Below are positions 54,231 through 64,000 of a DNA stretch of 64,000 nt, in pieces. Within the stretch, counting starts at the first letter, position 1, and each line of letters begins with the position of its first letter. Location of the stretch: positions 3,534,001 to 3,598,000 of the forward strand of contig OX337229.1 of the NCBI GenBank assembly GCA_946965045.2. The letters are read 5' to 3'. The notes below the pieces were generated by a model. That model was not told the origin of the DNA, did not search any database, and saw only the letters and a list, made by a program, of their open reading frames with translations. Made by a program: the position numbers and the translations under genes. Origin of the DNA: Epithemia pelagica (lineage: Eukaryota > Protista > Bacillariophyta).

Positions 54231-54591
54231 CAAAAGAAACAGGACGCAATTCTATCGTACCTCGCCCATGACAACTAGAATTTGACCCCAATTTCATGCG
54301 AGTATCAAAGCAATCTGCATTTCGATCGCCAATTGTGAGTCACTCGTGGGCTACAATAGATGATCTTGGAAAGGAGGCTCTGTGATTGTCCAATTTGCGC
54401 TCTGTCAATGCATTCACATCGGCACGACCGGAACTCCCGTCATTTCAGGATCTGTCATTGCGCCCTATGGGCAAACTGAGACCTAGTGGGCAAATAAGTG
54501 TTTCTATAGTTGCGCCCATTTTCGATATGCGAGGATTTATTAACAAAACGATAGCTAAGTACACAGCGCAATTAAATGAACCAGATAATAT

Positions 54592-57500
54592 CTACTTCTT
54601 TGGAATCTTGGATAGGTCAAAGTCATTTCCACTTCCATACCGCCAGGCGTCCATCTGTCGGTTCAAGTCATACTTGCTTCGTGGCCTTTTCAGCGCCGTA
54701 TTGCCGACCGGCCTCAACCAAGGACTCACAAAGTTGTCAAGGGCACTGTACGCGCCCATCATGCCAACGTGGCCCATCCAGTCAACCAACGTTGGAAGAC
54801 CTACCCATGCCACAATTTGAGGCATGAACGTAGGATCGGCGACAAAACTTCTCGCCAAACTTCCAACCAACCCATCGAAACGCACCACGTCCTGAAGGAA
54901 CGGTTTGATCGTCCGGGGTCCCATATCGTTCATGACTTCAAAATTTGTCGCAAGAAGTCGGTTGACGAAACGTTTGTCCACGAACGGTTGTCTTACTCTA
55001 ATTGACATTGCCTGATAAAAAAGCAAAAAAGCTCGGTAAGATTAACACTGTTTATGAAAAGCTCGATCCTTGGAAATCTTACCTTCTGAAACATCCACGT
55101 TGCACTGAGATTTGGAGTGTAGGGATTGATTTTAGCCAGGTCTTGCTTCGTAAGTAGGTCATATTCTAGAGCCTCTGTAACTGCCGTTGTGATACGGCCA
55201 AGGTGTCTCGTGAGAGCTCCAAATCCACCAAAACTCAACGGGCTCTGGATCCCGGAGGCATCACCTACAGCAAGAATACGGTTGAACTCGGGCTGTAACG
55301 GTGACTCCCGATAAGTGGGAAAGTAGGCAAAGAGGACACGTTTGACATCGAGATCCAGCTCTGGGTTCTTGATGGATGGTTGGTATTGCGGCAACAACCG
55401 CCAATAGTCCTCCAAAATCGACTCCAATGTCGGGCGTCTTTGGTGTGCATCCATGTAGGTAAACATATAAGTGGTTTTGGTGTCGCTTGTTCCTGGTTGT
55501 TTCCCATTACGTCCAATTCCTACAGGGAACGCCTCCCAGAAATACTGCATTCGTCCTCCCTGACGGCCTTTGTCTTGAATTGGCGTGTTCGTGTAGATAA
55601 TATCACCATTCAGATTTGTTTCAGGCTCATATCCAGACGCGCAAGTGCCGACGACTGCGCAGATACCGTCCGGCTTCTTCCCATAACGCTGCTGTCGAGT
55701 AATGGGGGAGTTGTTGCCCATGGCGTCGATTATCAGCCGAGCAGTCACAGGTTCTTGATACGCACCAAAATCAAGAGCAGCTCCAATTTCTTTGACTGCG
55801 CAGACTCCTTGAAGACGAGTTTCTTCTACGATCACACCCCCGAGCGATTGAAATCGTTGGGACACACGCTCAATCAATATCTTTGGGGAGACACCAAGGT
55901 TCAAGACTCCTTCCGTGAAACATTCATATCCTACTCCGTTCTCAAGATAGCCGCCCTTTACTTCGACCTCCTTATTCTTGAACCCAGAACGACAACCAGG
56001 GAAATCAGTTTGAATAGCATCATCGATGTCTTCTTGACTTAGAACTCCAAGACTCTTCAGATGGAAAAGCTCGTCCATACTTATATTCCACTCTTGTTCG
56101 CGTCCTCGGAGCTTACCAGCCTCAACAACGCAAACGTTGTGACCTTCAAGCTGCAAGGCGGTAGCAAAGAAGATTCCAAGAGTTCCACCGCATACAGCGA
56201 TGTCGAAATCCAATGCTCGGTCTCTTTGACTCAGTAGTTTGGCAAAGCATTGGGGGTTGCCCTGTCCTCCGTCTTCAGTAACGAACGGCTCGGGAGGGAC
56301 ATCATTCACACCTGGCATATACTCTTTCAATCTAGCCCAACTTGCCTCCGCCCGCTGGAAGGCTTCCCATGATGAAGCGCCTCCTGCTCCCGTGGCTTGG
56401 TTCTCAGTAACGATCGACCTCATGATTCGTTCTGTCATTCCGGTCGTATCAATGTCCGGAGCAAGCCGCTCACCTGTCATTTCTCTATCGAGTGGAACGC
56501 CGCCCGTTAGAGCCAACCGTAAGTGTTTCTTAAGCAGACCACCATAACTACGAGAGTCACTGTCTGCTCTACCGTCGCCGGACTGCTTGATATTCTCCAT
56601 GAATGAGTCAAAACGACCCGATACGGATCCCATCCCGGTCTTGGGTGATTTGTTGTTGAACTTCCCTCCACCTCTCCCTGATTTTGTCTCTTCCGTCGAT
56701 TTGACATAGTCCAGGTATTGGTCGTTAGGACCATTACCAGTATCTATGCGACCACGCGTCTCGCCGTTGGTCGTGGAAGACGCCGATCCATCCGCAACGG
56801 ACCACGGACTGGATGTCTTGTCGACTGTGGAAGATTCAGATGAATACGCTGTCTGTGTCTCGTCCAACTCATTTTCAGCGATTCCCGTGGGCTTAGATGA
56901 AGTCCAGGAAAATGACCATTGGCGTTCTTGCCCCTCTTGTTGAGTTTTCTGGGGCTCCGGTTCTGGGACCGACTCGGGTGTGTTAACTCCGGTTGTTCCT
57001 GAGGCAGCTCTCGCTGAGGTCCAGGCGTACGACCACTGAGATTGTTGCGTTTCCTGACCACCATTCACCGATGCCGGGTCCCCTGAAACTCCACGACTCG
57101 GATCATAATCTTCCTGTGGTCCTCGTTGAGATCCAAAGAATCCTGGTGCTGATGCGACATTGGCATTTTCGTTGGTTTGGCTTGGAGTCTCACCATTAGT
57201 CGGTGAAGGCCAACCATCACCGCTTGGTGATGCTTGTGAGACCTCATTACCCCAGGAGGAATAAGGTGACGGTTCAGAAGAGGTTTGCTTTTCAGTGACT
57301 TTTCCATCGCCGTTGACCCCATTGATTTCAGCAGGTGTTGCTCCGTTCATAGCAGATGACAATTGCTGTCCAGTCGAGGGAAAATCAGGAAAAAATGAAG
57401 ACTGATCATCCTGCACTTCTGATCCGGTAGTTGTGCCCCAAGGGGACGGAAATGACGATGGACCTCCGGACGCATTTGCGTCCGCTGACTCGCTTTCCAC

Positions 57501-60161
57501 TGATCCTGGTGGCGACCAAGACGAGGGTGCTGATTGTGCACCATTTGGTTCTTGGTAGTCGGTGGAAGCACCAGAGCCCCATGAAGCAGTAAACTCTGAT
57601 TCGGCATTGTCTGTATCTTGAGCCTCACTGGGGGGCGTCCATGCCGAGAAAGGTGAAGTCGAAGATTGTGCCCCTTGCTGCTCCTGGGGTTCCTCAGTCT
57701 GATCATTCGATGGTGACCACGGAGAAAACGACGATTCTGTGTCATCCTGAGATGAACTAGCAGATGATGGACTTGAGTCGTACGAAAAGGATGGAGTGGA
57801 ACTGTCCTCTTCTTCGGCAGGTGCAGCCGGTGTCCAGGAGGAAAATGGAGACGACGACGCTGCTGCTGGCTCTGAGTCAGATTTCGCTGGCGACCAAGGT
57901 GAAAATGAAGACTTGGTATCCTCGGTCGTTTCGGAAGCCGCTGGTGGACTAGAGTCATACGAAAAACTTGGAGTGGAATTGTCCTCTTCTTCGGCAGGGG
58001 CCGCCGGAGGTGTCCACGAGGAAAATGGAGAAGACGTCGCTGCTGGCTCTGAATCTGACTGCGACGGCGACCATGGCGAGAACGAGGATTGACTTTCCTC
58101 TGTTGATTCTGAAGCCGTTTGTGGACTGGAGTCATACGAAAAGGATGGAGTGGAACTGTCTTCTTCTTCGGCAGGGGCCGCCGGAGGTGTCCACGAGGAA
58201 AATGGAGACGATGAAGCTGCTGCTGGCTCCGAGTCCGATTTCGACGGAGACCAAGGTGAAAATGAAGACTTGGTATCCTCGGTTGTTTCCGAAGCCGCTG
58301 GTGGACTTGAGTCGTACGAAAAGGATGGAGTGGAATTGTCCTCTTCTTCGGCAGGTGCCGCCGGTGGTGTCCACGAGGAAAATGGAGACGACGTCGCTGC
58401 CGGCTCCGAGTCCGATTTCGATGGTGACCAAGGTGAAAAGGATGATTGAGTCTCCTCTGACGATTCCAAAGCCGCTGGGGGACTGGAGTCGTACGAAAAG
58501 GATGGAGTGGAACTGTCCTCTTCTTCGGCAGGTGCCGCCGGTGGTGTCCAGGATGAAAATGGAGACGACGCAGCGGCTGTTGGCTCCGAGTCCGATTTCG
58601 ACGGAGACCAAGGTGAAAATGAAGACTTGGTATCCTCGGTTGTTTCCGAAGCCGCTGGTGGACTTGAATCGTACGAAAAGGATGGAGTGGAATTGTCCTC
58701 TTCTTCGGCAGGTGCCGCCGGAGGGGTCCACGCAGAAAACGGTGACGATGCTTCTGCGGCTGGCTCCGAATCCGATTTCGATGGAGACCAAGGTGAAAAG
58801 GATGATTTAGCCTCCTCTGACGATTCCGAAGCCGCGGGAGGACCGGAGTCATAGGAAAAGGATGGAGTGGAATTGTCCTCTTCTTCGGCAGGTGCCGCCG
58901 GTGGTGTCCACGCAGAAAACGGTGACGACGCTGCTGCGGCTGGCTCCGAGTCCGATTTCGATGGAGACCAAGGTGAAAAGGATGATTTAGTCTCTTCTTC
59001 TGCGGAAGCTGCTGGTGGACCTGCATCGTACGAGAAGGTGGGCTGGGCAGTGGTGGTGTCTTCACCTTGAGAATCCGTCTCTACGGACGGACCAGAATCG
59101 TAAGAAAAGGAGGAGGATGCATCGGGAGTGCTTTCACTGTCATCTGCTCCGGCGCTTGAGGGGGACCAAGGAGAAAATGGTGATGCTGGCTGCTCTTCCT
59201 CATCGCTAGAAGATTTGGAGGGTGACCATGGCGAGAAGGATGATTTGGTGTCCTCCGACGAGGAACTACCCGTAGGCGGACCTGTATCATACGAGAAGCT
59301 TGGAGTGGCCGTGTCCTCCTCCTCAGAAGCTGCAGGAGGTGTCCACGCAGAAAATGGAGACGACGTCGCAGCAGTTTCTTTGCTGTCATCTCCAGAGGAT
59401 TTGGATGGTGACCACGGAGAGAAGGATGACTTTTCTTCTTCCTTGGAGTCACTCGCTCCAGGAGGTCCTGGTTCATACGAAAAGGCAGGAGCACTTGCCA
59501 GTGGATTGGAATTGCTGGAATCATCCTCTTCTGACGAGGAAGGAGGCGACCACGCTGAGAATGGTGAGCTCGTCGCCGCTGTCGTTTCCTCTTGTTTCGA
59601 TTCCTGTGAATCATCGTTGGAAGCGGTGGCTTGGGAGGGTGACCAAGGAGAGAAGGGAGATTGGGTGCCTTGCGAGCTATCGCTACCACCAGACTTGGAA
59701 GGAGACCATGGCGAGAAGGATGATTTCCCTGAATCGGATCCGCCGGACGGTGGACCTGGCTCGTACGAAAACGTTGACTGGGAAGCCTCGCTGTCCGTGC
59801 TTGCTTCGGGCGACCCGTCTCCACTGCTTCCATTAATGTCCCCATTGGCACCACTGCTATCCTGCTCCGAGTCAGTGGTACTGCCACCGGAAGGTGACCA
59901 CGGTGAGAATGGGTTTCCACCGCCACCGCCACCACCTCCTCCACCGCCACCAGGCGACCATGCTTTCTTGACCTGTGACGAGCCACCCGCCGGTGGAATG
60001 GACGAACTTAGCACGAGACCTTCTTTGTGCCTGTTGTTGTCTTCCACTGGGCGACTTTTTGATCGAGAACTAAACGATTGGAAAAAGCCTCCAAATCCAG
60101 TGACCCTCGTCGGACTCGACGACAAGACCGCCAAAACGAGAGTGGGAAGCAAAATCCTCAT
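54592..60161 (-). CDS. cruP: Plastid-targeted CruP-like (lycopene-cyclase-paralogue) FAD oxidoreductase with giant N-terminal W[S/T]P-repeat IDR
   Basis: Exons 60161-55083 and 55011-54592 (1,832 aa). Signal peptide …RVTG-FGGFF. C-terminal ~600 aa has DIAVCGGTLGIF, GREQEWNIS, IIDAMGNNSPI, YFWEAFP, TYMFTY, GDASGIQSPLSFGGFG and WRYGSG, as I recall from the plant At2g32640/CruP family. Confidence 0.85.
57735..58988 (-). repeat. Coding tandem array: 7 units of ~180 nt (59-60 aa)
   Basis: Unit KSSFSPWSPSKSDSEPAAAASSPFSAWTPPAAPAEEEDNSTPSFSYDSGPPAASESSEEA repeated 7 times, read directly from the translation. Confidence 0.95.
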
Positions 60162-61033
60162 GATGATGACCCTCTTTTCTTTCCAATGTCGATCTCAGGA
60201 CCACCGACGTGATTCCGTGCCTGAGAAAATGTTGCCGTCCACAGCTACCACAACTTGGTTCCACTTTCCTATTAGTTGTCTGGATGCCAACAATGAATTC
60301 ACGGTGTCAATTATTTCAGACTCTTCGGTTCTTTTGCAATGGATGGATCAAAACATATCACGCAATAACGACGCTTCGAACTTCGAATCGAGAGTTGAAA
60401 GTTGAGACCTCGTCGGTGTGTCTTTGATGTGTACGTCAGTTGGTTTTCTTCGGTGACATGAATTTGACCAATGAAAGGTCTTTGACGAGAAGTTCGGTGC
60501 AATGACGTCAAGCGTTCATCTATATGGGTAGCTATGGAACCGAAGTCCGAAATGTAGATGGAGTAGTAACATTCTTAGGTGTAGGGATAAAAGGATAAAA
60601 GCGACCTATCATTCCTTTTAAGCGACTCAAATGCTGTCAGAGGTATGACGAGAGAGGACGAGACGTTGAAGTGGATGCCATTTGCCATTGGGTCCTATTC
60701 TGATAGCAACGTGTCTTGGAACTGTGTCAAAAATGATGGGGGTCGTTGCCATCATATTATCTATTTCTCTCAAAGTAAGGACGTAGAAGACGTAATTTAG
60801 GACTTTATGCTGGTAGAGTTACGACCCTACCATAACACCGTCGTCTTGTCCGTATTCTTGCCAATTTTATCGACTGGGAGTACACTTGTGTATGAGAGAG
60901 AAATTGGGGAGGAGCAACTAAGTAAGTAGCATGACTATTGAGTTACACTCGATCCAACGTGTTTTGGCGTCACGATGGAAAGATGACAGGAGAGAGATTT
61001 TAATGTGTGCAAAAGTGGAAGGGCGGAATCGAG

Positions 61034-61846
61034 CTATGACGACTCTTTTCTTTCCTTCTTGGTGGTCGCCGGGGGCGCTTTTCCAGCAGCCGCCTTCTTG
61101 TCACTAGCCCCTCGTGTGAAGGAGACATAGGCCGTCCAGAAAAATGAGACCATGTGTCGGAAGGGCATTCGAATGTGGGTAGGAAGGGCAAACTGGACAC
61201 AATCACTCGGTCCCCATAGTCGTACCATTGCTGTCAAATCATCTTTCGAATTTTTCATGTATTTCATGACACCGTCTCGAGCCCAGTCTAGTGGATTCCA
61301 GCTTGTTCCGGTAATAAACTCCTTGACTGTGTAGTAGGATGGGAAGTACAAAATGGGCAAATGCACAAAAATGTCAAACAGGACCATTTTACCCGCATCC
61401 AGAATCCCCGCTGTATCTTTAAGTTTCTCTGCTAGCGACAACTTTCCAAATCGGTCCATTGTTGGAAACCACTGCCGATACTTGTTTACCATGAGCCAAT
61501 ATTGGAAGCCACCCAAATAAGTCGCACCAAAGACAATGAAAATCGCATTTCGCTTCCAATCAATTTCTTTGAGACTCTTTCCTTCTGCGACAACTTGCAC
61601 CACTAAATCGGCCGCTTGCGTCTTTCCTGTAGCAACTAAGAGTTGAAAGATGAAGGGCTGCTCTTTCGGAAATGCCATCAACTTGGACATGAAATCCCCG
61701 GATGACGCTGCCTTGCTCGTCCGTGGTGCGGCATCCGCAACGGCTGTGGCTTTTTGGTTGGCCACTGATCTGTGTAGCAACCGACGACTCCGCGCTACAG
61801 CAGAACAAGAGAGCGCCGCCATATGCCGTTGAGACCCTAACATCAT
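61034..61846 (-). CDS. Mpv17/PMP22 family membrane protein
   Basis: ATGKTQAADLVVQ, IDWKRNAIFIVFG, FDIFVHLPILYFPSYY and LWGPSDCVQFALP…FRHMVSFFWTAYVS match the Mpv17/PMP22 layout. The start is uncertain (possible upstream exon). Confidence 0.75.
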   Translation of the reverse strand: MMLGSQRHMAALSCSAVARSRRLLHRSVANQKATAVADAAPRTSKAASSGDFMSKLMAFPKEQPFIFQLLVATGKTQAADLVVQVVAEGKSLKEIDWKRNAIFIVFGATYLGGFQYWLMVNKYRQWFPTMDRFGKLSLAEKLKDTAGILDAGKMVLFDIFVHLPILYFPSYYTVKEFITGTSWNPLDWARDGVMKYMKNSKDDLTAMVRLWGPSDCVQFALPTHIRMPFRHMVSFFWTAYVSFTRGASDKKAAAGKAPPATTKKERKESS

Positions 61847-62931
61847 TGTCGTCGCCACTGTGATGTGTCTCTGATAGACAAAAAGCACCTATCAAGCACA
61901 CGACAAACGCTCACTCTAAATTCTGTGATTATCCATTGCCCCGTACGGCGCAACAGGCAACAAGACGAAGCAGAGAAGACCGGTCAGAAATGGGTGCGTG
62001 GAAGAGCATGAGAGGAGGATGCGTTGACGTCAGCCTCAAGATCTTGAAGTGAGGCAATCTGAATTGACGACTTTGACACATGGTTGACGTCATGTCGAAC
62101 AGGAGCTTTTTTGCATCTTGTACGTGCCACGTCACTTTCATTCCAATTCTCATCGATTGAGCGTTTTAATTGAAACAAATCATCAAAATGATATTGGAAT
62201 ACCGCACGCTTAGTATTGAGTTGTTTATGGTGTCCCTTTTTGTTTCTCTCTCAAGAACAAGATGGGCGGATATGGGAGACTGAACCATGCAGTAGACGAA
62301 GAAACCAACAAAGCCGACACATTCCAAAGATCCAATGAAAAGCCAGCACCATTAGGCACGCAGACACTCAACGTACAACTTTGGAGGAGAGGGTGTGTCG
62401 GTTTCTCACAAGCTTGTTTTGCATTACTGGTAGCCATGGGTAGACAATAGACAACTGGAAACACATGGATTCGTAGAAAGAAACAAGAAAGCTTGGCTCC
62501 TCGAACGAAACCTCGGTTTGCCATGGTCCATGGTCCATGGTGTCCATAGTCCATAGCGTTTAGGTCATTTTTTATTTTTTGTCATGCTAGACGATCTGCC
62601 GTTTCCGTAGTATTATGAAGACAAAAGAAGGATAAGGGATTGGTAGCTCTGCATACAGGGTGGCACACATCAGAAAGAAGGAGGGTGACACGGAATGTAC
62701 TAAGGAAAGATGGTTTAGTCGTCGTGGGACACCAACGACGGCACAGACACACACTTGATCCCGGAATGGAACGTATGACGACAAAGTTTGTCACCCAGTC
62801 ATGGCCATGGCGTTCTCAACGCTAGGAACGGGATAAGAACAAATGGTTACCGGCAGAGCGGTCGTTTTCATTATTAGCATGGCTCCTCTCCAGACATGAC
62901 GGTGAAACCAGCTAAAGCAAGTTACATATCA

Positions 62932-64000
62932 TCACTTCCAGACCACTAGCAGTCCCTTTTTCAGAGTCTTGTCATTGCTAAATGCTGCTATCATGTTGCG
63001 ATTGGGATGGCTCACCAGGCACGTGATTTCGGCCTTGGTCGTCATGGTCGTCGCGTCGGTCTTGTTGGCCTCCTTGCTCATACTTTGCCTGCCAAAGTCG
63101 TCTATCGAACCGACAACCGTTCCCTTTCCGACATCAAAGACCGACAAGGTTCCATCCTCTCGCACAAGAAACAAATATCGATTCGACGGGCTTGTCGAAG
63201 CCGCACAGAATACGCTCTTGCTAGAAGTCGTATCCTCAAACACTTGCAGGACAACGCCCGAGGAATTGACCAAGACTGCCTTTCCAGATCGGGCCACCAG
63301 AACCATTGATTGGGACGGTGTATGGAGCGGCAACACACAAGCAATTGCGGCACGTGTATCCACCGTCGAAACGTCAGTCATGACCAACGAAACTCCCACT
63401 TTTGTTTCTGGTCCAGGTTGTTGAAGAATGACTAGGCATTCCGCCGAACTTGCATCAAAGACGCGGACTTTGCCATCGACGGATCCAGTGATGACTCTCA
63501 AGCCTGCGGAAGGGTGGATCGAATAGAAGCACGTGTTGACATAGGAATTGTGACCTGTGAATTCCTTGAGCATTTTCGACGTACGTAAACCGAATTCTCG
63601 ACATTTCGAGTCTTGACCGGCCGTCAAGATATGACTACCGTTGGGGGAGAATTGGACATTGGAAACGGCTGCCGAGTGGCACTTGAGGATACAGAGGCAA
63701 CGTCCTGTGTCGATTCGCCATATATTCACCTGGCCGGTCAAGTCGCCCGAGGCGAGCAACGCTCCGTCATTCGACACTGCCAAAGCTGTCACAGCAACGT
63801 CGTGACCCAGCAGTTCATCGTTTTTCTGGTAGGGGAGATCGTGACGCAGCTGGTTGAAATTTTGCGAGGCATCCCAAATCTCAATGAGTCCATCGGACGA
63901 ACCCGTAACCAGACCGGAGCCATCTGGCAAAAATGCGGCAGCTTCACACCAAGCTTTCTTTCCAAATTTGATGGTTGCGAAAGGCTTGGAAGGGATCGAC
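62932..64000 (-). CDS. SMU1: WD40-repeat splicing factor SMU1-like (5' part outside the window)
   Basis: IKFGKKAWCEAAAFLPDGSGLVTGSSDGLIEIW, LRHDLPYQKND and KMLKEFTGHNSYVN parallel the SMU1 WD40 region. The frame is open to the window edge. Confidence 0.85.
   Translation of the reverse strand, partial: SIPSKPFATIKFGKKAWCEAAAFLPDGSGLVTGSSDGLIEIWDASQNFNQLRHDLPYQKNDELLGHDVAVTALAVSNDGALLASGDLTGQVNIWRIDTGRCLCILKCHSAAVSNVQFSPNGSHILTAGQDSKCREFGLRTSKMLKEFTGHNSYVNTCFYSIHPSAGLRVITGSVDGKVRVFDASSAECLVILQQPGPETKVGVSLVMTDVSTVDTRAAIACVLPLHTPSQSMVLVARSGKAVLVNSSGVVLQVFEDTTSSKSVFCAASTSPSNRYLFLVREDGTLSVFDVGKGTVVGSIDDFGRQSMSKEANKTDATTMTTKAEITCLVSHPNRNMIAAFSNDKTLKKGLLVVWK

What the first reader, a model, noticed from the sequence alone, without database searches (positions are those of the whole stretch)
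56560..60161. CruP-like plastid enzyme fused to an ~1,150-aa arm of W[S/T]P 'sticker' motifs: candidate pyrenoid/condensate-tethered redox enzyme
Seen: a Phe+1 plastid-targeting leader, then an extremely Ser/Pro/Ala/Glu-rich disordered region. It contains about 26 W[S/T]P motifs (KKAWSPGG, FSPWSP, FSAWTP, FSSWTP) interleaved with about a dozen FSY[D/E] motifs, in the same reading frame as a complete CruP-like FAD domain. Established: plant and cyanobacterial CruP homologues are roughly single-domain proteins, and CruP has been linked to ROS protection under stress rather than firmly to lycopene cyclisation. The Phaeodactylum pyrenoid linker PYCO1 uses repeated KWSP stickers separated by disordered spacers to condense Rubisco. 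Inference: regularly spaced aromatic stickers in an IDR could tether this enzyme to the pyrenoid or another stromal condensate, coupling a photoprotective redox activity to the CO2-concentrating compartment. Caveat: this arm is acidic and mostly lacks the Lys of KWSP, so its partner may not be Rubisco.
Basis: partly seen in the sequence, partly recalled or inferred. Interest (0 to 1): 0.85.

Follow-up and report, generated by a model that had tools for sequence, protein, structure and literature searches.

The report
Diatom CruP enzyme with tryptophan-sticker arm
A diatom gene joins a conserved chloroplast flavoenzyme (CruP type) to a roughly 1,200-residue disordered arm with 26 selected Trp-Ser/Thr-Pro motifs; these match the contact core of the only known diatom Rubisco-linker sticker, so the enzyme is a credible but untested pyrenoid-tethered protein.

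Summary
One minus-strand gene (54592-60161, two exons, 1,832 aa) encodes four parts:
- a signal peptide with Phe at +1;
- a ~1,200-aa Ser/Pro/Ala/Glu-rich arm with 26 W[ST]P and 12 FSY[DE] motifs, built from 60-aa units with an aromatic motif about every 20 residues;
- a CruP-type FAD domain;
- a short C-terminal exon.

The fusion is real. The ORF is unbroken. A spliced transcript contig runs from the 3' end into the arm. The syntenic Epithemia clementina orthologue is annotated at 1,690 aa.

The stickers look selected. The two arms are unalignable and four-fold sites are near saturation. Yet the relative keeps 18 W[ST]P motifs, the same 58-60-aa unit and the same 20/40 spacing.

New here: many diatom CruP orthologues carry long variable arms. 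One unrelated lineage carries about 13 copies of the other PYCO1 sticker type, the large-subunit helix, including 'LAAEWASMN'.

W-S-P is the contact core of PYCO1's small-subunit sticker. The K/RGGS flanks are missing here, and the arm is acidic.

The pyrenoid tether is the best-supported mechanism (about 45%) but is unproven. Earlier scan notes report PYCO1-like sticker proteins elsewhere in this genome; I did not test them.

The parts
54592..60161 (-). Whole gene: two exons, 1,832 codons plus stop.
   Evidence: ORF list. Splice sites read from the sequence. Spliced contigs in runs X3 and X1.
60096..60161 (-). Signal peptide, residues 1-22 (MRILLPTLVLAVLSSSPTRVTG).
   Evidence: Hydropathy profile. 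Orthologues have a signal peptide followed by A/S/G-F.
59982..60095 (-). Phe23 at +1, then a Ser-rich stretch of net charge +2 that resembles a transit peptide (residues 23-60).
   Evidence: by inspection only. No ASAFind or SignalP run was possible.
59916..59972 (-). VKKAWSP followed by a 12-Gly run (residues 64-82). This is the one motif with PYCO1-like basic and Gly flanks. It is conserved as QVKKAWSPFGS in E. clementina.
   Evidence: Run X3 shows a 12-nt length variant in the Gly run.
58986..59912 (-). Older, diverged repeat units (residues 84-392). They keep FS.W[ST]P and FSY[DE] while the spacers differ. This stretch includes FSPWSPSGGS.
57735..58985 (-). Young tandem array (residues 393-809): seven units of 59-60 aa. 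Each unit has FSPWSPSKS, FS[AS]WTPP and FSYD about 20 residues apart.
   Evidence: TRF, unit alignment and codon counts.
56481..57734 (-). Non-repetitive tail of the arm (residues 810-1227). It holds the last three W[ST]P motifs, other Trp motifs (QWSYAWTS, QWSFSWTS) and QYLDYV at 56703-56717. The last ~110 residues are 43% identical to E. clementina.
55083..56480 (-). CruP-type FAD domain, the exon 1 part (residues 1228-1693). The dinucleotide-binding motif DIAVCGGTLG lies at 56175-56204.
   Evidence: Homologues, alignments, AF2 model and Foldseek.
55012..55082 (-). 71-nt intron with GT..AG ends.
   Evidence: Sequence. Skipped in a 2,806-nt contig of X3 and in an X1 metatranscriptome contig. 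Present in the DNA runs X2 and X4.
54592..55011 (-). Exon 2: the C-terminal 139 residues of the enzyme (AMSIRVRQPFVDKRFVNRLLATNFEVM...) and the stop codon.
   Evidence: It matches the C-termini of full-length orthologues such as P0026. ORF.

Best explanation
The gene makes one chloroplast-imported protein. It enters by a signal peptide with Phe at +1 and a short transit-like stretch.

Its C-terminal ~600 residues are a conserved, probably active CruP-type flavoenzyme. CruP is a cyanobacterium-derived relative of the CruA lycopene cyclase and of the green-algal de-epoxidase CVDE. It has been linked to protection against reactive oxygen rather than to cyclisation.

Its N-terminal ~1,200 residues are a disordered sticker-and-spacer arm. 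About 38 short aromatic motifs (26 F-S-x-W-[ST]-P and 12 F-S-Y-[DE]) sit roughly every 20 residues, separated by acidic Ser/Pro/Ala spacers. Selection keeps the motifs and their spacing while the spacers drift and the units amplify.

Most likely mechanism (inferred, not shown): the W-[ST]-P motifs act like the W-S-P core of PYCO1's small-subunit sticker. They would dock on Rubisco small subunits, or join the sticker oligomers of basic PYCO1-type linkers. That would concentrate the enzyme in or on the pyrenoid matrix as a highly multivalent client or co-scaffold.
For: One protein:
- Exon 1 is an unbroken 5,079-nt frame.
- One X3 contig of 2,806 nt lacks the intron and runs from 54500 to 57352, about residue 937 of the arm. 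All arm bins are covered in X3, and depth falls upstream of the ATG. The DNA runs X2 and X4 keep the intron.
- The syntenic E. clementina gene is annotated at 1,690 aa, and its upstream neighbour is 83% identical to the window's.
- An Entomoneis transcriptome holds a 1,263-aa orthologue with a 659-aa arm.

Enzyme:
- The best 80 prokaryotic hits kept are almost all cyanobacteria, at 39-48% identity.
- P0205 is named 'lycopene cyclase CruP' by IMG, and the plant homologue P0176 is 47% identical.
- All 32 invariant family columns are kept.
- The AF2 model has pLDDT 85. Foldseek matches flavin halogenases and geranylgeranyl reductases at E 1e-18 to 1e-15.

Selected stickers:
- In the young array, sticker codons differ 103 times synonymously and 10 times non-synonymously. 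Spacer codons differ 212 and 159 times.
- Against E. clementina, 68% of four-fold sites differ. The arm DNA gives no blastn hit, and arm protein identity is 25%.
- Even so, that arm has 18 W[ST]P against 0.85 expected. It has the same 58-60-aa unit and 21/37 spacing, against 20/40 here.

Rubisco link:
- In the PYCO1-Rubisco structure the contacts are W476, S477, P478 and S482 of KWSPRGGS (PMC10288592).
- The window has KKAWSPGGG and WSPSGGS.
- P0134-P0136, in a separate starred clade, carry 13 [DEN]W[AGV] motifs against 0.7 expected. These include DLANEWASSN, NLADEWAAVN and SLAAEWASMN. PYCO1's large-subunit helices are GNLASEWASMNT and GNLAAEWGSMNQ.
Against: - No KWSP occurs in the arm. 25 of the 26 motifs lack the preceding Lys and the R/Q-G-G-S tail, and 12 have Thr in place of Ser.
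- There is no GTGYNP motif and no large-subunit helix in this arm.
- The arm carries net charge -130, whereas PYCO1 behaves as a basic protein.
- The close relative P0002 (83% identical enzyme) has a 334-aa arm without W[ST]P. Most long-armed orthologues have few Trp residues. Arms therefore exist without these stickers.
- Part of the motif count comes from recent unit amplification, not from independent retention.
- The PYCO1 authors found no KWSPR/Q motif in other Phaeodactylum proteins.
- There are no localisation, binding or proteomic data. I found no paper linking CruP to pyrenoids.
- I could not check whether this species has a pyrenoid, or whether its RbcS keeps N105, N133 and G137.
Confidence: 0.45

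Rival explanations
1. The arm is a functional sticker-spacer region, but its partner is not Rubisco. The aromatic F-S-x-W and F-S-Y motifs could drive self-association or binding to another stromal body. Alternatively they could sit at the thylakoid or lipid interface. That would hold a membrane-substrate enzyme close to carotenoid-containing membranes.
For: The motif and its spacing are conserved, which shows function but not the partner. The flanks differ from KWSPRGGS. The arm is strongly acidic. The related enzyme CVDE acts on membrane carotenoids. In PYCO1 itself, aromatic motifs also drive homotypic condensation. A second short motif, xYL[DEG]xL, recurs in 25 of 81 diatom arms (35 copies against 0.12 expected) and has no known Rubisco role.
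Against: This does not explain why an independent lineage put near-exact PYCO1 large-subunit helices on the same enzyme. The arm has almost no aliphatic residues to support membrane insertion.
Confidence: 0.3
2. The arm is a largely neutral or generic disordered spacer. It could be a solubility or entropic bristle, or a by-product of repeat expansion. On this reading the many W[ST]P motifs simply reflect amplification of one seed unit in each species.
For: Arm length in orthologues varies from ~0 to 1,860 aa, with unrelated sequences. The central array is young, at 83-89% nucleotide identity. P0002 lacks the motifs. No relative of the arm was found in the protein or metagenome searches.
Against: The older, diverged units also keep the motif. 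Non-synonymous changes avoid sticker codons. A species at near-saturated synonymous distance keeps the motif, the unit length and the spacing.
Confidence: 0.17
3. The protein is not stromal. The signal peptide takes it into the secretory pathway, and the acidic Ser-rich, Trp/Tyr-bearing arm is a cell-wall (biosilica-type) or periplastidial region.
For: It has a signal peptide. From my own knowledge, acidic Ser-rich and aromatic repeats are reminiscent of diatom biosilica proteins.
Against: Phe lies at +1, and the orthologues carry classic A-F plastid motifs. The enzyme is of cyanobacterial origin and is conserved across diatoms, plants and cyanobacteria.
Confidence: 0.04
4. The arm and the enzyme are separate genes, or the long ORF is an artefact of repeat composition.
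For: An automatic ORF caller recorded only an 807-aa product, P0001. Other frames of the repeat also contain long ORFs. Short-read contigs break inside the repeats.
Against: P0001 starts at an internal GTG and reads through the intron, so it is a prokaryote-style call. A spliced contig bridges the enzyme and the arm. The syntenic orthologue is annotated full length.
Confidence: 0.04

Closest known systems
PYCO1 (Phatr3_J49957), the Rubisco linker of the Phaeodactylum tricornutum pyrenoid (PMC10288592)
   Same: Both are plastid-targeted, mostly disordered tandem-repeat proteins. Both have a Trp-Ser-Pro motif repeated many times and a second aromatic (Tyr) motif class. The unit length is similar: 60 aa here, about 80 aa in PYCO1. 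W, S and P are the residues that make the sticker-sticker and small-subunit contacts in the PYCO1 structure.
   Different: PYCO1 is a stand-alone scaffold with 6 KWSPRGGS motifs, 5 GTGYNP motifs and 2 large-subunit helices, and it behaves as a basic protein. This protein has 26 F-S-x-W-[ST]-P and 12 FSY[DE] motifs. It lacks the K/R-G-G-S flanks except in one copy. It has no large-subunit helix, a net charge of -130, and a ~600-aa enzyme at its end. I could not test sequence homology to PYCO1.
Rubisco-binding-motif proteins of Chlamydomonas (EPYC1, SAGA1/2 and others; Meyer et al. 2020, as cited in PMC13655443)
   Same: The logic is the same. A short linear motif is repeated in disordered regions and shared by a linker and by other proteins, and it targets folded domains to the pyrenoid.
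   Different: The motif, the Rubisco form (IB rather than ID) and the lineage are unrelated. No such shared-motif system has been described for diatoms.
CruP (Synechococcus PCC 7002 CruP; Arabidopsis At2g32640) and the chlorophycean de-epoxidase CVDE
   Same: The enzyme domain is homologous over its full length, at 39-48% identity to cyanobacterial and plant members. It keeps the family's invariant residues and has the FAD fold.
   Different: Known members are single-domain proteins of about 500-650 aa. This one has a 1,200-aa arm. I could not separate it from the CruA and CVDE paralogues, because no labelled reference sequences were available.
CruP orthologues P0134-P0136 from an unidentified diatom (JGI metagenome 3300050687)
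   Same: The same enzyme carries a 1,300-1,400-aa disordered N-terminal arm with repeated Trp motifs.
   Different: Their motif is the PYCO1 large-subunit helix type (LAxEWAxxN), not W[ST]P. They lie in a different diatom clade.

Membership tests
CruA/CruP family of lycopene-cyclase-like flavoproteins (CruP branch) | Full-length homology to cyanobacterial CruP. | tested here: met
   The 80 best prokaryotic loci are nearly all cyanobacteria, at 39-48% identity over residues ~10-466 of the domain. P0205 is named 'lycopene cyclase CruP' by IMG and matches at E 1.5e-76 and 40% identity.
CruA/CruP family of lycopene-cyclase-like flavoproteins (CruP branch) | Orthologues in plants and algae (CruP, unlike CruA, occurs in eukaryotic phototrophs). 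| tested here: met
   The plant protein P0176 (594 aa) is 47% identical. P0151 is named 'Lycopene beta/epsilon cyclase protein'. Green-algal hits are 39-46% identical. The Atlas neighbours are plant, CruA-type and cyanobacterial clusters.
CruA/CruP family of lycopene-cyclase-like flavoproteins (CruP branch) | N-terminal dinucleotide-binding motif and a PHBH-type FAD fold. | tested here: met
   D-[VI]-x-[VI]-[CL]-G-G-T-L-G is conserved, although the first Gly of GxGxxG is replaced. The AF2 model has pLDDT 85.4 and pTM 0.87. Foldseek matches flavin halogenases, geranylgeranyl reductases and UbiH/UbiI. The Pfam and NCBIfam models give only sub-threshold hits.
CruA/CruP family of lycopene-cyclase-like flavoproteins (CruP branch) | Placement with CruP rather than with the CruA or CVDE paralogues. 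| tested here: inconclusive
   The tree puts diatoms beside other algal, plant and cyanobacterial homologues. No labelled CruA or CVDE sequence was available to root it or to mark those branches.
CruA/CruP family of lycopene-cyclase-like flavoproteins (CruP branch) | Biochemical activity (carotenoid substrate, protection against reactive oxygen). | not testable with these tools
   The activity of CruP is itself disputed in the literature (PMC11857680).
PYCO1-type Rubisco linker / sticker proteins | Small-subunit sticker KWSP[RQ]GGS. | tested here: not met
   There are 0 KWSP motifs. The contact core W-[ST]-P is present 26 times. Only KKAWSPGGG (residue 66) and WSPSGGS (residue 88) resemble the flanks.
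PYCO1-type Rubisco linker / sticker proteins | Tyr sticker GTGYNP. | tested here: not met
   There are 0 GYNP motifs. A different Tyr motif, FSY[DE], occurs 12 times.
PYCO1-type Rubisco linker / sticker proteins | Large-subunit helix (A[AS]EW[GA]SMN). | tested here: not met
   No [DEN]W[AG][AST] motif occurs in this ORF. The motif is present on the arm of the same enzyme in P0134-P0136.
PYCO1-type Rubisco linker / sticker proteins | Disordered tandem repeats of about 60-80 aa in a plastid-targeted protein. | tested here: met
   The units are 60 aa. The arm is 86% S/P/A/E/T/D/G/Q/K and 1.8% aliphatic. A signal peptide and Phe at +1 are present.
PYCO1-type Rubisco linker / sticker proteins | Binding to form ID Rubisco and localisation to the pyrenoid. 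| not testable with these tools
   This needs protein biochemistry or tagging.
Diatom bipartite plastid presequence (ASAFAP type) | A signal peptide followed by an aromatic residue at +1, then a Ser/Thr-rich, non-acidic transit peptide. | tested here: met
   Judged by inspection only: a hydrophobic core, then VTG|F, then a 40-residue stretch of net charge +2 with 10 Ser/Thr. Orthologues show A-F. No predictor was available.

The most novel reading that the evidence does not exclude
In diatoms, PYCO1's two Rubisco stickers form a shared targeting code, and CruP has been recruited to the pyrenoid at least twice independently. One lineage used small-subunit-type W-[ST]-P arrays (this species and Epithemia clementina). 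Another used large-subunit-type LAxEWAxxN helices (P0134-P0136). That would make CruP the first diatom enzyme known to carry Rubisco-binding motifs. It would also point to a pyrenoid-associated role, in oxidative damage or carotenoid chemistry, for an enzyme whose function is unresolved. With 26-38 stickers, the arm could act as a linker or co-scaffold itself.
Probability: 0.4. Interest if true: 0.85.

Novelty: new variant of a known kind. Interest (0 to 1): 0.72.

Why it matters
Only one structural pyrenoid linker, PYCO1, is known in pennate diatoms. Its authors found its small-subunit sticker in no other Phaeodactylum protein.

A conserved enzyme with arrays of PYCO1-like stickers appears in two lineages, each using a different sticker type. 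This suggests that diatoms use a motif-based address system like the Rubisco-binding motif of Chlamydomonas.

It also gives a concrete, testable location for CruP, whose biochemical role has been open since 2007-2012. The arm supplies natural sticker variants (F-S-x-W-S/T-P with acidic spacers). These are useful for learning what the red-type Rubisco sticker needs, and for pyrenoid engineering.

Tried and rejected
- Arm against 5.8 billion proteins of 931-2,963 aa: no hit. HMMER's low-complexity handling may hide relatives.
- Three arm units against JGI metagenome contigs: 599 pattern matches, none confirmed.
- PDB sequence searches with the enzyme and with the P0135 arm: nothing meaningful.
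- Pfam and NCBIfam on the whole protein and on the domain: only sub-threshold DAO, geranylgeranyl-reductase and carotene-cyclase hits. Family assignment therefore rests on homologues, not on curated models.
- Literature: the Maresca 2007 and Bradbury 2012 papers are not held. 'CruP' with 'pyrenoid' or 'diatom' gave only reviews. The YLDSL-motif search returned noise. 'Epithemia' with 'pyrenoid' was uninformative.
- The T. pseudonana pyrenoid blueprint preprint mentions no FAD or lycopene-cyclase protein.
- The PYCO1 co-IP tables held in the supplement list no obvious CruP, but the Phaeodactylum orthologue's identifier is unknown to me.
- dN/dS against E. clementina could not be computed, because synonymous sites are saturated. 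I report the four-fold-site difference instead.
- The bacterial promoter/terminator scan is irrelevant to a eukaryote.
- Rejected: separate genes; the 807-aa database product as the true model; a frustule protein.

Full report
WHAT IS THERE

24 of the 26 Trp motifs are FS[PAS]W[ST]P. Residues 26-1000 are 28% Ser, 13.5% Pro, 10.5% Ala and 9% Glu, with net charge -123. Only 1.8% are aliphatic or Cys residues, so the arm has no hydrophobic core.

The raw ORF ends in intron read-through. A 71-nt GT..AG intron (55012-55082) joins it in phase to a 139-codon second exon ending at 54592. The protein is therefore 1,832 aa.

GENE MODEL AND EXPRESSION

I laid four public runs on 54500-60400, which is 5,901 letters and within the operators' limit.
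- Runs X2 and X4 have contigs up to 0.5 Mb and keep the intron, so I take them as DNA.
- Run X3 is from the same study and its longest contig is 19.6 kb. It has one 2,806-nt contig that skips exactly 55011-55081 and runs from 54500 to 57352, about residue 937 inside the arm.
- X3 contigs cover every bin of the arm. Depth drops upstream of the ATG (15.8 beyond 60213), whereas the DNA runs stay flat.
- A metatranscriptome, X1, also holds the spliced junction.

X3's library type is not on record. I infer that it is RNA from the splicing and the contig sizes. Contigs cannot prove a single molecule across the repeats.

The database product P0001 (807 aa) starts at an internal GTG and reads into the intron. 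It is a prokaryote-style ORF call, not evidence for a short gene.

THE ENZYME

The last ~600 residues have thousands of homologues.
- Typical diatom orthologues are 590-700 aa. They have a signal peptide, an A-F junction and a 40-70-aa leader.
- The 80 best hits among one genome per prokaryotic species are almost all cyanobacteria, at 39-48% identity and near full length.
- One such protein is named 'lycopene cyclase CruP' by IMG, and a plant homologue is 47% identical.
- Atlas neighbours are plant FAD-oxidoreductase/lycopene-cyclase clusters, CruA-type clusters and cyanobacterial clusters.
- All invariant columns of a 30-sequence alignment are kept.
- The AF2 model is confident (pLDDT 85, pTM 0.87). 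It resembles flavin-dependent halogenases, geranylgeranyl reductases and UbiH-type monooxygenases.

'CruP-like' is therefore supported. I could not separate the domain from the CruA and CVDE paralogues, because no labelled references were available. The literature held here describes CruP activity as unresolved (PMC11857680). It describes CVDE as a CruP homologue (PMC7539987).

THE ARM

The central array (residues 393-809) is seven units of 59-60 aa. TRF finds a 180-nt period, and a 357-nt higher-order unit at 89%.

Each unit reads SSFSPWSPSKS-DSEPAAA-SSPFS[AS]WTPPAAPAEEED-STPSFSYDSSPP-acidic tail. An F-S-(x)-aromatic motif therefore recurs about every 20 residues. Older units (residues 84-392) have different spacers but keep the motifs.

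Among the young units, sticker codons show 103 synonymous and 10 non-synonymous pairwise differences. Spacer codons show 212 and 159. The Fisher p-value is 1.5e-12, but the pairs are not independent.

COMPARATIVE TEST OF THE STICKERS

A length-matched search found long orthologues. The closest is Epithemia clementina P0121, 1,690 aa and 89% identical in the enzyme domain. Its locus is syntenic: the upstream Mpv17/PMP22-like gene is 83% identical.

Neutral divergence between the two species is near saturation. 68% of four-fold sites in conserved codons differ. The arm DNA gives no blastn hit. The arm proteins are 25% identical except for the last ~120 residues.

Yet the E. clementina arm (1,086 aa) has 18 W[ST]P motifs against 0.85 expected from shuffles. 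Most are G-F-P-T-[ST]-W-S-P-T. Its unit is 58 aa with 21/37 spacing, against 60 aa and 20/40 here. The first motif, QVKKAWSP, is shared.

The net charge is not conserved: -28 there against -130 here.

Motif, valency and spacing are thus kept while sequence and charge drift. This is the signature of selected stickers. Independent amplification of a motif-bearing seed unit contributes to the counts.

A somewhat more distant relative, P0002 (83% identical enzyme), has a 334-aa arm without W[ST]P. No relative of the arm was found elsewhere.

LONG ARMS ARE A FAMILY TRAIT

At least 30 diatom orthologues have arms of 340-1,860 aa. Examples are Mayamaea 1,677, Seminavis 1,864 and 506, Fistulifera about 560, and an Entomoneis transcript at 659. 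These arms are Ser-rich and usually acidic, but unrelated in sequence. Most have few Trp residues.

Entomoneis and Seminavis also have short paralogues.

A second short motif, x-Y-L-[DEG]-x-L, occurs 35 times in 25 of 81 arms against 0.12 expected. It often lies directly after the A-F junction, and sometimes appears as GTGYLGEL. The window has QYLDYV at residue 1149. I have no explanation for this motif.

THE LINK TO RUBISCO

PYCO1 binds the small subunit through KWSPRGGS. The described contacts are:
- W476, which contacts the neighbouring sticker;
- S477, which bonds to RbcS N133 and G137;
- P478, which packs against the neighbouring Trp;
- S482, which bonds to RbcS N105.

W476A abolishes binding (PMC10288592). 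The arm's W-[ST]-P is that core. Its flanks differ, except in KKAWSPGGG (residue 66) and WSPSGGS (residue 88).

PYCO1 also binds the large subunit through the helices GNLAAEWGSMNQ and GNLASEWASMNT.

A scan note on another gene of this genome drew my attention to that motif. I then found that the CruP orthologues P0134-P0136 have arms of 1,300-1,400 aa with 13 [DEN]W[AGV] motifs against 0.7 expected. These include DLANEWASSN, NLADEWAAVN, SLAAEWAPTN and SLAAEWASMN. They come from an unidentified diatom, on an 8.5-kb JGI contig with an unbroken ORF.

They sit in a different starred clade from the window. Their sister, P0015, has a short arm.

The same enzyme therefore carries each of PYCO1's two Rubisco-sticker types in two separate lineages.

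MECHANISM AND ODDS

Shown:
- one imported protein;
- a conserved flavoenzyme;
- a disordered multivalent arm with selected aromatic motifs.

Inferred: the motifs dock on Rubisco small subunits, or co-oligomerise with the W-S-P stickers of basic PYCO1-type linkers. An acidic arm would also favour co-condensation with a basic linker. This would concentrate CruP at the pyrenoid. I put this at about 45%.

Rivals:
- about 30% for a functional sticker arm with another partner (self-condensate or membrane surface);
- about 17% for a mostly generic spacer;
- under 10% together for a secretory location or a wrong gene model.

Points against the tether are listed in the Against line: missing flanks, acidity, absence in P0002, and no experimental data.

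NOVELTY

Sticker-spacer Rubisco binders are a known kind. A PYCO1-type sticker array fused to an enzyme is not described in the papers I could search. Neither is its recurrence on CruP.

Earlier notes of this scan report PYCO1-like proteins with both stickers in this genome (s1-248284, s1-225145), and giant arrays of the large-subunit helix (s1-248275, s1-230415). I did not test these notes. If they hold, the sticker system exists in this species.

Noticed in passing
P0134, P0135, P0136; L082:673-6669: CruP orthologues of an unidentified diatom (JGI metagenome 3300050687) have 1,300-1,400-aa arms with about 13 E/D-W-A motifs. These include SLAAEWASMN, DLANEWASSN and NLADEWAAVN, which are the PYCO1 large-subunit helix type.
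   Followed up: partly
window 56703-56717; arms of 25 of 81 diatom orthologues (e.g. P0121 residues 30 and 931, P0123 x4, P0131 x5): A short motif x-Y-L-[DEG]-x-L (SYLDSL, GYLDNL, GTGYLGEL) recurs in the arms, often directly after the A-F junction. There are 35 copies against 0.12 expected from shuffles. Its function is unknown. GTGY recalls PYCO1's GTGYNP sticker.
   Followed up: partly
P0003 vs P0122 (Entomoneis paludosa); P0022, P0145, P0149 (Seminavis robusta): Some raphid diatoms have both a short and one or two long-armed CruP paralogues. In the tree, the long-armed Entomoneis copy is sister to the window's clade.
   Followed up: partly
window 59916-59951 and 55016-55050: Length variants appear between runs: a 12-nt deletion in the poly-Gly codon run (X3), and 2-nt insertions inside the intron (X2, X4). 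These are likely alleles.
   Followed up: no
window 61034-61888 (-) and L081:4281-5093: The upstream neighbour is an Mpv17/PMP22-like protein (sub-threshold Pfam hit). It is 83% identical to the neighbour in Epithemia clementina and in the same order, so the window comes from a close relative of that species.
   Followed up: partly
window 57347-59065 (-), 57968-58810 (+), 59128-60405 (+): The repeat DNA is open in several other frames on both strands (ORFs of 280-572 aa). I take this as a by-product of the biased repeat composition, not as extra genes.
   Followed up: no
window 62932-63930 (-): A WD40 beta-propeller ORF (Pfam WD40, E 6e-32). It runs toward the window's end and is probably part of a larger gene.
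   Followed up: no
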